Assembly (NCBI RefSeq): GCF_000143415.4
Contig: NW_003314267.1
Location: 1,985,497 to 2,049,496 of the forward strand
DNA length: 64,000 nucleotides
Direction of reading: 5' to 3'
Origin: Selaginella moellendorffii
Lineage: Eukaryota; Plantae; Lycopodiophyta
The notes beneath the pieces are model-generated. The model was not told where the DNA came from. It saw only the letters and a program-made list of their open reading frames with translations, and did not search any database. Both the position numbers and the translations under genes were made by a program. Positions 52,641 through 58,130 of this stretch are shown piece after piece (position 1 is the first letter of the stretch; each line of letters starts with the position of its first letter).

Positions 52641-53910
52641 TCATTGTTGTTTCATGATATTGACATGTGTAGTACTTTTTGTAACTCCAAAATTAGCACA
52701 TCTAGACCTTGGACAATAGCCACCTCACTCTTCCTTGCTTCTAGGATTTGTCATATCACTTTGTGGTAGGGATCACAAAAATTCTTAGCCAAATTGTGGG
52801 AAACTAACACTCCTAGATTTTGCATGAGAAGGACCATTCCATCAAGATTCAATAGTACAACTAAAATGAACTTTTGACACGTTTAAGGTGTCATGCTAAC
52901 ATCGAGCTCTTTTAGAGAATGGTGAGAATACTCCACATTCATGTCCAAAAGAAGATTTTCCTTAGCAAAAAAATGTAGAAAGATTTGTCACCACCACCTC
53001 ACTATTTAAGCCTTAATATGTGCCAATTGTGATCCTCTTGTGGAATCTCCCATCCAAGGAAAAATTGCTCCTTCTCATTTTCTTGATCTTGGGCATGTCC
53101 TCGTTACTTTTAAACTCCAAACATACTTACACCACCCTCTTAAGCATCTTTTCCCTTGGCATTGGCTTGAGGTACTATTATTAGTGTTTTTCCTTGGGCA
53201 TGCTTTTTTTCCTTCTCAGCAATAACAACAAAACTTTACTTCTCAGATTTCACAAAAGATTCACTTGGTCATGAATTAGATCCACCATCAACCATCTTTT
53301 TGCATTCAACTCTTCAAAAAGATGCTACAATAGTATTATGTTAAAGATTATCAAAAGAAACTCAGAAGTTAATTCTTTCCCCACATGCAAGAATTGTCAC
53401 ACAATCTTTATAATATTAAGAAAGGTGTAATGAACAAACTTAAACCACATGACATAAAATATTTAACATATTAGCCTAGCAATACTTCCTTGATCTTTTG
53501 CCAACATAGCCTAGTTGCTCTATGCTTATTAATAGTAGCCTTATAACACAAAATATGCATGCACATGTGACCCAACATTGTAGCACATTGTAGATGCCAA
53601 CATAGGATCTCCAAACATGCTCACTCCAAAGTACTCGGGAATATTAAAATAAACATAATTGTTGTTCAGATAAAAGATCCCACATCCAAATGTGAGCATG
53701 CTCCAATTTAAGTTGTAAACAACAAAACACTGTTTACTCTAGAGCACACGCCAAGAAACATTGTTAAACACAAAATCCCTCTTTCCATCACGAGTTTGTC
53801 CTTTAGAAACCCAATTAGTTAGGGTTTGTATAGGGAACGTTAACTTTTTTACTTTTTTTCAGTAAAATAAGACTTTTGAATTTTTTACCACTTTAGGGTT
53901 TATAGGGCTT

Positions 53911-54716
53911 ATGCTCCGGGCATGGATTGGAGCTAGGTCGCGGTCGAGAGCGCTGCTCCAGCAGTGCCGACGGCTGAGCGCGCCGCCTCCTCAAATTGTG
54001 GATCCCGCCGATGGATCGCCTCCGCCTCCGCCTCCATCTCCGCCTCCTCCCGCCGTGATCGACAATGAGGAGACGAGGCGCGCCAAGCAGCGCGCGGCGG
54101 ATCTCAAGGCCATCTATGAAGGTAAGATGGATTTCGAGATCGCTACCAGGGTCGCATTTGGGGAATCTAAGAATCCAAATCCCAAGGAGCTCGGGTATGT
54201 TGCTAGAGTCCTCTTTGGGAAATAAGTGTCTTCCTCTTTCTTCCAGGCTTGATTGGCACTTGTGGCAGTTCTTCGTATGCGTCGTCGTCCCGGTTTCTCG
54301 TAAGCGACCAAAGTTCTAGCTCGATTTTTCTTTGTGGCTGAGCGCTTTGATTCTCTTGTCTGGAGCAGTGATCTACATGGTGGCAATGTACGCGCGTCGA
54401 GAGATTCGAAGATTGGAGAAGGTAAGGATGGAACTTGGAGAGCTTTCTCTAACCATTTTTTTCTCTTTTCCAGGAGAGAGGGATTGAGCCACTGCCAAAG
54501 AAGACATGGGCGAATAGATACGAGATCGATCGATTGCAAAAGGAGTACCAAGCCAAACGAACAGTGAGGCGCGCGGGATTAGACGTCGAAGAGCTCAAAT
54601 CTCTCAAAGGCAGGCTCGATTCGATCGATGACAAACTCGCCAAACTGGAAACGTTTTTAAATCGCCCAGCGCTTCCAGAGATACCTTCAAGTCCTCCAGC
54701 AAATCAATCAAAGTGA
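53911..54716 (+). CDS. Single-pass membrane/coiled-coil protein, At1g80980-like, with putative mitochondrial presequence; 4 exons
   Basis: Spliced WHLWQFFVCVVVPVSL-IYMVAMYARREIRRLEK..ELKSLKGRLDSIDDKL; telo-box just before the ATG. Confidence 0.7.
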
Positions 54717-54792
54717 CGAGCTTGTTTCAATCCCCACCGTCAAATTTGCCGGGCGATCTGACGGTCACGGTTTTACGTTATTAGGGTTCTTC

Positions 54793-57001
54793 ATGGGTAG
54801 TGTTTCGTGGTTGAGGCATATTTCCAGCGCTAGGGTTTTAGGCTTGAGGATCGATCGTCGGCGTTTTTACAGCGTGATGCCGCGAGGAGAGGAATCAGCA
54901 GCTGGGGCGGAGGCATCGGCTTCGGCGGTGGAAGCATCGCCAGGTATGAGCAAGAAAGCCGCACAGAAGGCCGCGAAGAAAGCCGAGAAGGAGCTCCGCC
55001 AGGCTGCTGCGCTCGCCGCGGCTGCCGCGGAGGAGGAAGAAATTGATCCACTGGCGGACAAGTACGGGGATACGAAGCTGGAGGATTTGCAATCCAAGGC
55101 TGTGACTGGGCGGAAGTGGACCGAGATTTCGGAGCTTGGGACCGATCTGGAGGGCTCTACTGTGCTGGTTCGTGGGAGAGTTCACAGCAAGAGAGCGAAA
55201 GGGAAGATGGCATTTTTGGTGCTTCGTGAGACTATCCATACCGTGCAATGCGTGGTTTCTATGGAGAACGTCGGGAGCAAACAGTTTGTGAAGTATGCGA
55301 GCTTGCTGAGCAAAGAGTCCGTTGTGGACGTGACGGGAAATGTGTCAAATCCAAGAAATCCAGTGTCTGGGACGACACAACCGGTAAGTCTTTTTCTTTT
55401 GTCGTGAAGTCATCTTCATCGTGTTCGTGCTTTGTTCTTCACAGGTGGAAATCCAGGTGACAGAACTCCATTGTATATCTAGGTCGACCAACGAGCTCCC
55501 TCTTCTGTTGGAAGATGCCGCTCGCAGCGACCAGGATATTGAGAAAGCTGCAAAGGTGAGTCGAGTCTCTTTTCTATTGCGTGGTTTAGTTTGATTTGTT
55601 TCTCTTCAGGAAGGCATTCAATATGCACGCGTTCTACAAGACACGAGGCTGAATAACAGGGTCCTTGATCTTAGAATCCCTGCCAATCAAGCGATCTTTA
55701 CCGTTCAGTCGGAAATCTCAAGCGTATGTGCTTTGTTCGTTTTGTGACGAATTGTGGCGCTGAGAAGCTTGTTATGGTTTTTTTCAGCTCTTTCACGACT
55801 TTCTACGGGCTAACAAGTTTCGCCAGATCCACACGCCAAAGCTTATCGCTGGTGCTAGCGAAGGTGGCTCTGCAGTGTTCAAGCTGCAGTACGCTAATGA
55901 TCAACCTGCATGTCTGGCTCAATCACCGCAGCTGCACAAACAGATGGCAATTTGTGGTGACTTCCGTCGAGTTTTCGAGATAGGTCCTGTTTTCAGAGCC
56001 GAAAAATCTTTTACTCATCGGCACCTGTGTGAATTTATCGGGCTCGATTTTGAAATGGAGATCAAGGAACACTATTTCGAGGTAGAGTTTATTTGAACTA
56101 GACGATGGGTAACTTTTCCACTTGCAGATCATCGACCTGATTGGCAAACTCTTCATCTATGTGTTCAACGAGCTTAACAAGAACTGCAAGAAAGAGCTTG
56201 AAACGATCAACAGCCAGTATCCTTTTGAGCCATTGCAGGTTTGCTTACTTGTAAATTCAGTATAAATTGTTTCAACTGTGTACCTCTTTCAGTATCTCGA
56301 CGAAACCCTGGTACTCGCATTTGCCGAGGGGATTCAGATGTTAAAGGTGATTGTTTCTATCATTGATTTTTGCAAGACCTGACGCGTGATAACAGGAAGC
56401 TGGGTTTGAGACTGATCCTCTTGGAGACCTTGACACAGAAACTGAGAGGAGACTGGGACTTCTTGTGAAGGAGAGGTGAGTAGTTTGTTTAACCCCTCTC
56501 ATGCTCTTACGATTGATTCTTCTTCACAGATACAAGACTGATTTTTATATTCTTCATCGATATCCACTTGCTGTCCGGCCATTCTATACCATGCCTGCTG
56601 TCGACGATCCTAAATATTCAAACTCATTCGACGTTTTCATTCGGGGTTAGTCATCGTTGTTTCCTGTCGTTATTTGTTTGTTCTGATTGTCTTTTGTAGG
56701 CGAGGAAATCATCTCCGGTGCCCAGCGTGTTCATGACAAGGATCTTCTTCTAAAGCGGATCGAGGAGTGCAACATTGATCCAAACGCTATTGGCTTGCAG
56801 AACTACATAAATTCTTTCAGGTGAATAGCGAAAACATTAAACTTTTTGCGTGACAAATTTCCTGTTACTGGCAGCTATGGTGCACCACCTCACGGAGGCA
56901 TTGGCGTCGGCTTGGAACGAGTAGCGATGCTCTTCTGCAATCTGGACAACATAAGGAAGGTCTCTTTGTTTCCTCGTGATCCTAATAGGCTGGCACCTTA
57001 G
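54793..57001 (+). CDS. Aspartate--tRNA ligase, eukaryotic cytosolic type, with a 28-aa N-terminal extension; about 11 exons
   Basis: OB fold [113 protein letters not shown]. Confidence 0.97.
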
Positions 57002-57051
57002 ATCGAGGATAACGGTGTCCTGATAATTAGGCACCAGATTTTGCACAAGTG

Positions 57052-58130
57052 TTACAACCCATATTGACGCAAGGGATGAGGTTCTTCTTCTTCTTGCTGC
57101 TTCTTGTTGATCTTTCTCTTTGGAAAGACAGGAGGCCTTTCGTCCCTGAGCAGTGGTATCTTCTGTACGTTGTCGATCTTGTGAGGTACATTTTTGAACT
57201 TGGAAATGACAAATCTTTGCTTAGGCCTCGGCGGGTTCCTCCAGCAGAACCAGCGTATTATTCTCATGTCGGTGGTCTTGTTGTTCTTGACAGGGACAAA
57301 GACTGGCCTGATAACTTGGAAGTCGTGATGGTGTTGGGTATTCATCCTGATGAAATCGTTTCCATAAGCATAGCGAATGACTTCATCCATGCTGTCGCCC
57401 CTGTTTCAGGAAAAGAAGAACACGATCATATTAAGCAAAGATTGACGAAGACACCACTTTGGTTCAAACCTTTCGAGCGGTGTGCCGTAGACGTGGTCTG
57501 GATTTACTACCGATGGAAGTGGAGCAACGTTTGCCTGGTACAAAGCAAGGTTGTCATGGTGGAACTAGCAATTCGAGGTAAAGTTTACCAGTCTCTGCTT
57601 GACTTTGAGCTTGATTGGGTGCTCTCTTCGGTACATTCTCTGTTCGTCTGCCCGTGTGACTTTCCTGAGAGAAGGAAGTGGCGAAAAGAAGAAAAGTTTG
57701 AGTTTTGGAGTGTTGGATCTTACATTTTCGGAGCCTTCTTGTTCATAGCTCGCAGATCAGTGCCTTTGGCAGCGCTTGGGTCAGGGACGTTCTCTCGGAA
57801 GACCATCACTGCGAGGAACCAATACCCGAGTTAGTGTTTCCCTCATCGAGTGATCGAACAGGCCTGGACTAACTAACGTTCTTTCACTGTAGGAGAATAC
57901 TCGTTGAGCACTCCATAGATGAAGTTGTCGCTGGGAAGATCCCTGGTGCATCGTTTTCCCTGGAACGAGGATTGACATGAGCAAAGCCGATGAAGAAACT
58001 TGACGCAAGATAGAGGTACCGCTCCCAGCTTCGGTTTGATGAGAATCTCATCCTTTGCAGATGAGCTCCGGACATTCCCCATTCTGGGATGATCCGACTC
58101 GTCGTAAGTCATGTTGCCTGGATTCGACAT
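57052..58130 (-). CDS. CFAP77: Cilia- and flagella-associated protein 77 homolog (DUF4483), multi-exon
   Basis: HPRMGNVRSSSAKDEILIKPKLG / GKRCTRDLPSDNFIYG / GTDLRAMNKKA / PDHVYGTP / SMDEVIRYAYGNDF match the FAP77 family pattern as recalled. Confidence 0.7.

What the first reader, a model, noticed from the sequence alone, without database searches (positions are those of the whole stretch)
54793..54879. Cytosolic-type AspRS with an in-frame mitochondrial presequence-like extension and two start codons
Seen: ATG 54793 adds [28 protein letters not shown] (Arg/Ser-rich, one acidic residue, ending R-F-Y-S) before a second ATG at 54877 that opens the usual acidic/Lys-rich cytosolic N-terminus. A telo-box-like motif precedes each ATG (54781, 54831). 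Established: R-x-Y/S is the R-3 mitochondrial processing motif; S. moellendorffii mtDNA lacks tRNA genes; in Silene, mt-tRNA loss was accompanied by cytosolic aaRSs gaining transit peptides. Inference: dual targeting to charge imported cytosolic tRNA-Asp.
Basis: partly seen in the sequence, partly recalled or inferred. Interest (0 to 1): 0.7.

Follow-up and report, generated by a model that had tools for sequence, protein, structure and literature searches.

The report
Spikemoss AspRS with presequence-like upstream start
The spikemoss's single cytosolic-type aspartyl-tRNA synthetase gene has an extra upstream start codon that would add a 28-residue peptide resembling a mitochondrial import signal. 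This is a plausible but unproven way to charge tRNA-Asp inside mitochondria that have lost all their tRNA genes.

Summary
The window is Selaginella moellendorffii scaffold GL377571.1, and the gene is its eukaryotic-type AspRS (10 exons, 54793-57001). All nine introns are confirmed by spliced RNA contigs from four studies.

ATG1 (54793) opens a 572-aa ORF identical to RefSeq XP_002965575.2, so the long form is already annotated, though it is named 'cytoplasmic'. ATG2 (54877) gives the N-terminal length typical of 146 plant cytosolic AspRS. The older JGI model starts at ATG3 (54946).

The 28 extra residues are basic (6 Arg, 1 Asp). They end in R-F-Y|S-V, the MPP/ICP55 '-3R' motif, two residues before the canonical Met. 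ATG1 has a weak initiation context, ATG2 a better one, and no out-of-frame ATG lies between them. This matches the layout of the known dual cytosol/mitochondria plant aaRS genes.

Function is not shown. RNA contigs start at 54766 in one run and at 54810 in another, so they straddle ATG1, and contigs cannot give a transcription start. No other Selaginella sequence was reachable, and no targeting predictor was available. In Silene, AspRS is one of the enzymes that was not retargeted.

Verdict: a credible candidate (about 50%) and a new member of a known kind.

The parts
54793..57001 (+). Eukaryotic (class IIb) AspRS gene. The 10 exons are 54793-55383, 55445-55555, 55610-55723, 55788-56081, 56128-56238, 56293-56346, 56396-56475, 56530-56645, 56700-56820 and 56875-57001. 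It encodes 572 aa from ATG1.
   Evidence: The spliced translation is identical to XP_002965575.2. All 9 introns appear as GT..AG joints in contigs of 4 runs. Pfam PF01336 and PF00152 match.
54793..54876 (+). In-frame 28-codon N-terminal extension opened by ATG1. It is basic, Ser-rich and presequence-like.
   Evidence: The amino acid sequence is identical in the second haplotype.
54862..54876 (+). Codons for R24-F25-Y26-S27-V28. This is a -3R type MPP/ICP55 processing motif ending 2 residues before Met29.
   Evidence: Sequence. Motif definition RX(F/Y/I/L)|(S/A)(S/T), or (S/T/V/A) in dual-targeted proteins, from PMC4986872.
54877..54879 (+). ATG2, the canonical cytosolic start (544-aa form). 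Its context is G at -3 and C at +4.
   Evidence: The N-terminal length from ATG2 equals the median of 146 plant cytosolic AspRS (offset +1, 5-95% range -12 to +14). Context.
54946..54948 (+). ATG3, the in-frame start used by the original JGI models (521 aa), just before the Lys-rich helix.
   Evidence: EFJ32995.1 and EFJ15871.1 begin MSKKAAQ.
54949..55017 (+). Lys-rich N-terminal helix typical of eukaryotic AspRS ([21 protein letters not shown]).
   Evidence: Conserved block in alignments with plant AspRS.
54782..54788 (+). Telo-box-like TAGGGTT, 4 nt upstream of ATG1. It is followed by the pyrimidine run TTCTTC (54787-54792).
54831..54837 (+). Second telo-box-like TAGGGTT, inside the extension and 40 nt upstream of ATG2.
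54717..54792 (+). 76-nt spacer between the upstream gene's stop codon and ATG1. It must hold that gene's 3' end and the AspRS promoter or leader. The second haplotype differs by a 12-nt insertion after 54723 and a G>C at 54755.
53911..54716 (+). Upstream neighbour: an expressed 4-exon gene for a 209-aa protein with no Pfam match. It has its own basic N-terminus, a Pro-rich tract, a hydrophobic segment and a coiled-coil tail.

Best explanation
This is the single cytosolic-type AspRS gene of Selaginella moellendorffii, and it probably makes two proteins from one reading frame. Initiation at ATG2 (54877) gives the ordinary 544-aa cytosolic enzyme. Initiation at ATG1 (54793) adds 28 residues that act as a cleavable mitochondrial presequence. 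MPP would cut after F25 and ICP55 would remove Y26, leaving a mature enzyme only two residues longer than the cytosolic one. That enzyme would charge imported cytosolic tRNA-Asp in mitochondria that encode no tRNAs. The two forms would arise by leaky scanning past the weak-context, short-leader ATG1, by a second transcription start between the two ATGs, or by both. Shown: the gene model, the ORF, the composition and motif, the canonical position of ATG2, and RNA contigs that contain ATG1. Inferred: use of ATG1, import, cleavage, and the role in mitochondria.
For: (1) The long ORF is real and equals RefSeq XP_002965575.2. (2) ATG2 gives the canonical N-terminal length. The long form, at +28, is an outlier among 146 plant cytosolic AspRS, only 5 of which are >= +27. 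(3) The extension has net charge +5 and one acidic residue. The canonical N-termini have a median net charge of -2. (4) R-F-Y|S-V fits the plant -3R MPP/ICP55 motif and lies at the junction with the canonical Met (PMC4986872). The combination of charge and motif was found in no other of 727 control ORFs. (5) ATG1 has T at -3 and G at +4; ATG2 has G at -3. No out-of-frame ATG lies between 54628 and 54946. Arabidopsis ValRS, ThrRS and GlyRS use this leaky-scanning layout for cytosol plus mitochondria (PMC8770321). (6) A spliced AspRS contig in run X9 starts at 54766, 27 nt upstream of ATG1, and contigs in X1 and X2 run through it. (7) The mtDNA has no tRNA genes (PMC5654404). The species has the plant presequence import machinery (PMC3095331). 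(8) There is only one locus, present as two haplotypes with the same neighbours, so a cytosolic form must also come from this gene.
Against: (1) Contigs cannot define a transcription start. In run X12 the AspRS contig begins at 54810, 17 nt downstream of ATG1. ATG1 is only 76 nt from the upstream gene's stop codon, so reads over it may belong to that gene's 3' UTR. (2) In Silene, AspRS was not retargeted after loss of the mitochondrial tRNA-Asp; the organellar enzyme serves, so retargeting is not a necessity (PMC10375062, PMC13308715). (3) I found no sequence from another Selaginella species. The closest relative in the databases is 67% identical: Diphasiastrum, which has no extension. (4) The two haplotypes show no difference from 54756 to 55215, so they carry no information on constraint. 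(5) Amphipathicity is only moderate (maximum hydrophobic moment 0.49) and 26-28 residues is short for a plant presequence. (6) Translated non-coding DNA is naturally rich in Arg, Ser and Leu. GC by codon position in the extension (0.39/0.54/0.57) does not resemble the rest of exon 1 (0.62/0.47/0.62). (7) The RefSeq start choice is not evidence. On the other haplotype RefSeq starts 24 codons further upstream, at an ATG created by a 12-nt insertion.
Confidence: 0.5

Rival explanations
1. The enzyme is cytosolic only. ATG1 lies in the promoter, the extreme 5' leader or the neighbour's 3' UTR, and is in frame by chance. The main mRNA starts between the two ATGs (about 54800-54810). That start would lie downstream of the TTCTTC pyrimidine patch and the first telo-box, with the second telo-box in its 5' UTR, and only the 544-aa protein would be made in meaningful amounts. 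The 572-aa RefSeq model would be a longest-ORF choice.
For: The AspRS contig of run X12 starts at 54810. The upstream-gene contigs of X9 and X12 end at 54725, leaving uncovered gaps that include or abut ATG1. Only 76 nt separate the genes. RefSeq picked a still more upstream ATG on the other haplotype, which shows that its rule is simply the first in-frame ATG. An open 27-codon stretch has about a 27% chance of occurring at random. Arg/Ser/Leu richness is the default for translated non-coding DNA, and the GC pattern by codon position is not coding-like. AspRS was not retargeted in Silene.
Against: The combination of net charge +5 and a -3R motif placed exactly at the canonical Met was unique among 727 control ORFs. 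One spliced AspRS contig starts 27 nt upstream of ATG1. Weak ATG1 context, better ATG2 context and no intervening out-of-frame ATG make up the designed-looking layout of known dual-targeted aaRS.
Confidence: 0.35
2. ATG1 is used, but the extension is a plastid or ambiguous (plastid plus mitochondrion) transit peptide. It would serve chloroplasts, which in Selaginella also import many cytosolic tRNAs.
For: Selaginella plastids have lost about two thirds of their tRNA genes and import around forty nuclear tRNAs (PMC11573648). Most organellar aaRS of Arabidopsis are dual-targeted. Dual-targeted proteins show the cleavage motif RX(F/L)|(S/A)(S/T/V/A), which fits the V at +2 here. The peptide is rich in Ser.
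Against: 21% Arg and a short length are more typical of mitochondrial than of plastid transit peptides. I could not establish whether plastid trnD is lost in S. moellendorffii. No predictor or experiment was available.
Confidence: 0.08
3. ATG1 is the main or only start, and the extra 28 residues are a non-targeting N-terminal tail, for example an added basic tRNA-binding or regulatory appendage on a cytosolic enzyme.
For: Eukaryotic AspRS already carries a basic N-terminal tRNA-binding helix. RefSeq annotates the long form as cytoplasmic.
Against: Among the 146 plant orthologues only two have a comparable basic extension, the gene models of Taxus and Camellia. MGSVSW does not fit the N-myristoylation consensus, because W sits where a small residue is required. 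The weak ATG1 context argues against it being the main start.
Confidence: 0.05

Closest known systems
Arabidopsis ValRS (AT1G14610), ThrRS (AT5G26830), GlyRS (AT1G29880): one gene with two in-frame AUGs giving cytosolic and mitochondrial isoforms by leaky scanning (Souciet 1999 and Duchene 2001, as cited in PMC8770321)
   Same: One gene of eukaryotic type. The upstream AUG adds a presequence and the downstream AUG opens the cytosolic enzyme. The first AUG is in the weaker context, and no out-of-frame AUG lies between them.
   Different: Here the enzyme is AspRS, for which no plant case is established. Import and use of ATG1 are untested, and an alternative transcription start is equally possible.
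Silene cytosolic aaRS retargeting after mitochondrial tRNA loss (Warren et al. 2023, PMC10375062; proteomics in PMC13308715)
   Same: Loss of mitochondrial tRNA genes, import of cytosolic tRNAs, and newly acquired N-terminal extensions on cytosolic aaRS. The extensions often arise through alternative transcription starts that give a long and a short isoform.
   Different: In Silene, AspRS belongs to the class that was not retargeted. The one S. vulgaris duplicate was not accepted as a likely case. If the Selaginella case is real, it goes further than Silene.
Trypanosoma brucei, two eukaryotic-type AspRS, one cytosolic and one mitochondrial (Charriere et al. 2009; known to me only from its title in the reference list of PMC4394434, as the paper was not held)
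   Same: The organism has no mitochondrial tRNA genes, and a eukaryotic-type AspRS works inside the mitochondria on imported tRNA-Asp.
   Different: There are two separate genes there. Here a single gene would supply both compartments.
Arabidopsis organellar AspRS AT4G33760 (bacterial type, chloroplast plus mitochondria; table in PMC13308715)
   Same: It is the enzyme that would normally supply mitochondrial AspRS activity in a land plant.
   Different: It belongs to a different evolutionary type. I could not check whether S. moellendorffii keeps such a gene or where its product goes.

Membership tests
Eukaryotic/archaeal-type (class IIb) aspartyl-tRNA synthetase | N-terminal OB-fold anticodon-binding domain (PF01336) | tested here: met
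   E = 1.9e-11 for residues 124-189 of exon 1. It is also listed for XP_002965575.2.
Eukaryotic/archaeal-type (class IIb) aspartyl-tRNA synthetase | Class II catalytic core (PF00152) and full-length similarity to plant cytosolic AspRS | tested here: met
   PF00152 is on record for the product. Identity to 146 plant cytosolic AspRS is 55-68% over about 490-540 residues.
Eukaryotic/archaeal-type (class IIb) aspartyl-tRNA synthetase | Lys-rich N-terminal helix of eukaryotic AspRS | tested here: met
   [14 protein letters not shown] aligns with the same block in other plants.
Dual cytosol/mitochondria aaRS made from two in-frame AUGs | Two in-frame AUGs with no stop and no out-of-frame AUG between them, the first in the weaker context | tested here: met
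   ATGs at 54793 (T at -3, G at +4) and 54877 (G at -3, C at +4). All four ATGs in 54600-54960 (54628, 54793, 54877, 54946) are in this frame.
Dual cytosol/mitochondria aaRS made from two in-frame AUGs | mRNAs that carry the upstream AUG | tested here: inconclusive
   Contig 5' ends are at 54766 (X9) and 54810 (X12). The X1 and X2 contigs are continuous with the upstream gene. Contigs cannot show a start.
Dual cytosol/mitochondria aaRS made from two in-frame AUGs | Long form imported into mitochondria and short form cytosolic | not testable with these tools
   This needs GFP fusions, in vitro import or organelle proteomics.
Cleavable mitochondrial presequence, -3R class | Net positive charge, almost no acidic residues, rich in Arg and Ser | tested here: met
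   6 R, 5 S, 1 D, net charge +5. Among control ORFs, 4% have >=6 R and 10% have net charge >=+5.
Cleavable mitochondrial presequence, -3R class | RX(F/Y/I/L)|(S/A)(S/T) processing motif | tested here: met
   R24-F25-Y26|S27-V28. The +2 residue is V, which fits the variant reported for dual-targeted proteins (PMC4986872).
Cleavable mitochondrial presequence, -3R class | Amphipathic helix | tested here: inconclusive
   The maximum Eisenberg hydrophobic moment is 0.49 (18-residue window), which is only moderate. TargetP and MitoFates were not available.
Cleavable mitochondrial presequence, -3R class | Conservation among species that share the need | tested here: inconclusive
   No other Selaginella AspRS was found in the searched collections. 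The two haplotypes are identical here.

The most novel reading that the evidence does not exclude
[quoted passage not shown] Even AspRS, which Silene did not retarget, would be supplied to mitochondria (perhaps also to plastids) by the cytosolic gene. It would do so through a de novo 28-residue presequence, with a telo-box before each start setting the ratio of the two isoforms. The ancestral bacterial-type AspRS would then be dispensable in mitochondria or already lost.
Probability: 0.3. Interest if true: 0.6.

Novelty: new member of a known kind. Interest (0 to 1): 0.4.

Why it matters
Selaginella is the extreme plant case of organellar tRNA loss: no mitochondrial tRNA genes, and plastids that import about forty nuclear tRNAs. 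The papers I could search say nothing about which synthetases charge those imported tRNAs. The 2024 S. kraussiana tRNA-import paper does not address aaRS at all. A cytosolic AspRS with a built-in presequence would be a concrete, easily testable first entry in that list. It would also contrast with Silene, where the organellar AspRS was kept. If the extension is not used, the case is still a useful warning. The current RefSeq proteins (572 aa, and 596 aa on the other haplotype) carry N-termini chosen as the longest ORF in a region only 76 nt from the neighbouring gene.

Tried and rejected
1. Word search with exon 1 alone returned only fragments at <=55% identity, because the length filter hid full-length relatives.

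2. The exhaustive representative search with exon 1 returned no Selaginella representative. Its top hit is a 3139-aa low-complexity protein and is spurious.

3. A profile of exon 1 plus a 612-aa carrier (A2) was swamped by grass sequences.

4. Aligning the exon pieces to Vitrella AspRS alone gave a scrambled alignment (A3), which I discarded. Adding two more full-length sequences gave a clean alignment (A4). That search finally found the S. moellendorffii RefSeq proteins.

5. Exact look-ups of the 544-aa short form and of the second haplotype's 572-aa form in transcript assemblies found nothing.

6. The Taxus locus could not be fetched because the file was too large.

7. Haplotype comparison as a test of constraint was uninformative: there are no differences from 54756 to 55215.

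8. Structured RNA in the leader is rejected. There was no Rfam hit in 53000-58000, and the folding z-score of 54756-54900 is 0.10.

9. N-myristoylation of MG... is rejected, because W sits where a small residue is required.

10. I could not establish from the papers whether plastid trnD is retained in S. moellendorffii; the information is only in figures.

Full report
**What is there.** ATG 54793 is in frame with ATG 54877, and the 28 codons between them encode a peptide with 6 Arg, 5 Ser and a single acidic residue. I built the gene model from the sequence: 10 exons, 54793-57001 on the + strand, all introns GT..AG. Spliced contigs from four runs of four different studies show all nine intron joints, so these runs are RNA and the model is right. 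The 572-residue translation from ATG1 is identical to RefSeq XP_002965575.2, 'aspartate--tRNA ligase 1, cytoplasmic [Selaginella moellendorffii]', on scaffold GL377571.1. This settles the organism. It also shows that the long reading frame is already the annotated protein, although it is named cytoplasmic. The original JGI model (EFJ32995.1, 521 aa) starts at a third in-frame ATG at 54946. Pfam finds the OB-fold anticodon-binding domain and the class II core.

**Which start is the ancestral one.** I compared the protein with 146 plant cytosolic-type AspRS (55-68% identity). The N-terminal length counted from ATG2 sits at the median: offset +1, with a 5-95% range of -12 to +14. The form from ATG1 is an outlier at +28. 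The canonical N-termini are acidic (median net charge -2 over the first 28 residues), whereas this extension has +5. The closest lycophyte available, Diphasiastrum, has no such extension. Among the five models with comparably long N-termini, only two carry a basic, transit-peptide-like extension before an internal Met: a Taxus and a Camellia gene model. I could not fetch the Taxus DNA to check it.

**Is the extension more than chance?** The window holds 727 ATG-opened, stop-free 28-codon stretches on both strands.
- 4% have six or more Arg.
- 10% have net charge of at least +5.
- 0.8% have R-x-[FYIL]-[SA] within four residues of the end.
- Only the finding itself has both charge and motif.

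These criteria were chosen after seeing the sequence, and translated non-coding DNA is inherently rich in Arg, Ser and Leu, so this is indicative only. The motif R24-F25-Y26|S27-V28 fits the plant -3R site. That site is now understood as MPP cleavage followed by ICP55 removal of one residue, with consensus RX(F/Y/I/L)|(S/A)(S/T), or (S/T/V/A) in dual-targeted proteins (PMC4986872). It lies two residues before the canonical Met, so a processed organellar enzyme would be almost identical to the cytosolic one. Amphipathicity is only moderate (maximum hydrophobic moment 0.49), and the GC pattern by codon position is not coding-like, though 28 codons give little power.

**Start-codon layout.** ATG1 has T at -3 and G at +4. 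ATG2 has G at -3. All four ATGs between 54600 and 54960 are in this one frame. This is the layout by which Arabidopsis ValRS, ThrRS and GlyRS make mitochondrial and cytosolic forms through leaky scanning (PMC8770321). The telo-box-like TAGGGTT motifs are real, at 54782-54788 and 54831-54837. The motif is about twofold enriched in the window, and four copies cluster at the starts of this gene and its upstream neighbour. A pyrimidine run, TTCTTC, abuts ATG1. From general knowledge of plant core promoters, this is compatible with a transcription start either just upstream or just downstream of ATG1.

**RNA evidence.** The stop codon of the upstream gene is at 54714-54716, 76 nt from ATG1.
- In run X9 the spliced AspRS contig begins at 54766, 27 nt upstream of ATG1.
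- In X12 it begins at 54810, 17 nt downstream of ATG1.
- In X1 and X2 a contig runs without a break from the upstream gene into AspRS exon 1.
- In X9 and X12 the upstream-gene contigs stop at 54725.

That stopping point coincides with a haplotype difference, a 12-nt insertion after 54723, followed by a SNP at 54755. Assembly breaks there are therefore expected and say little about RNA ends. All the runs were contigs, which by the tool's own statement cannot show a start, and a contig across two genes shows no single transcript. So ATG1 lies at the very 5' edge of the transcribed region. At least some assembled RNA contains it, but whether that RNA is AspRS mRNA or the neighbour's 3' UTR cannot be decided here.

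**The second haplotype.** On scaffold GL377621.1, with the same neighbouring genes, RefSeq gives 596 aa. The 12-nt insertion creates a further in-frame ATG in a strong context (A at -3, G at +4), only 16 nt after the upstream gene's coding end. This shows that the RefSeq start is simply the first in-frame ATG of the model and carries no functional weight. It also implies that AspRS mRNAs of that haplotype most likely start downstream of about 54725; otherwise little cytosolic enzyme would be made from it. The 28-residue extension is identical in the two haplotypes, but so are the 460 nt from 54756 to 55215, so no constraint can be read from this. Only this one locus (two haplotypes) plus a 106-aa fragment elsewhere was found in the 90% cluster, so the cytosolic enzyme must come from this gene.

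**Biological context.** S. moellendorffii mtDNA has no tRNA genes (PMC5654404). Selaginella plastids import about forty nuclear tRNAs (PMC11573648). The species has the plant-type presequence import apparatus (PMC3095331). The searchable literature contains nothing on aaRS targeting in Selaginella.

[quoted passage not shown] AspRS, however, is explicitly among the enzymes that were not retargeted. The organellar AspRS appears to charge the imported tRNA-Asp, helped by the shared G73 discriminator, and later proteomics agreed (PMC10375062; PMC13308715). Import of the cytosolic AspRS is therefore not forced by tRNA loss. On the other side, Trypanosoma brucei, which also lacks mitochondrial tRNA genes, uses a eukaryotic-type AspRS in its mitochondria. 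I know that paper only by its title in a reference list, because it was not held.

**Other checks.** No Rfam family matches 53000-58000 on either strand. The leader does not fold better than shuffled sequence (z = 0.10). Minus-strand ORFs over exon 1 are ordinary antisense ORFs of a GC-rich exon.

**Verdict.** I give about 50% to a dual-start gene whose long form is imported into mitochondria. I give about 35% to a cytosol-only enzyme with a fortuitous upstream ATG at the promoter/leader boundary. The rest goes to a plastid or ambiguous signal, or to a non-targeting tail. In kind it is a new member of a well-known class, dual-localised plant aaRS made from two in-frame AUGs or two transcription starts. 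It would be notable mainly because it concerns AspRS, in the plant lineage with the most extreme organellar tRNA loss.

Noticed in passing
window 54723-54724; L002:2993-3004: The second haplotype carries a 12-nt insertion (GTAAAAATCATG) that creates an in-frame ATG in a strong context, 24 codons upstream of ATG1. RefSeq therefore gives 596 aa on that haplotype and 572 aa here for what is the same gene.
   Followed up: yes
window 53911-54716 (+): The upstream neighbour is an expressed 4-exon gene for a 209-aa protein with no Pfam match. It has a basic, presequence-like N-terminus (MLRAWIGARSRSRALL...), a Pro-rich tract, one hydrophobic segment and a coiled-coil tail. Two telo-box-like motifs (53820, 53894) lie just before its ATG.
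   Followed up: partly
window 57001-57300: RNA contigs continue past the AspRS stop codon, and in two runs they skip 57165-57224 as a GT..AG intron on the + strand. The region overlaps a convergent minus-strand gene with a CFAP77 domain (about 57052-58130). So there is either a spliced AspRS 3' UTR or overlapping transcripts.
   Followed up: no
protein P0385 (EFJ30308.1), on a third S. moellendorffii scaffold: This is a 106-aa fragment, >=90% identical to AspRS exons 7-9, and probably a partial duplicate or pseudogene piece.
   Followed up: no
proteins P0377 (Taxus chinensis), P0294 (Camellia fascicularis), P0056, P0266 (Vitrella): Other cytosolic-type AspRS gene models also carry basic, transit-peptide-like in-frame extensions before the canonical Met. 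They are either recurrent retargeting or recurrent longest-ORF annotation artefacts.
   Followed up: partly
window 55101 (run X2): One contig has 31 unrelated letters before 55101, inside AspRS exon 1. It is probably an assembly chimera.
   Followed up: no
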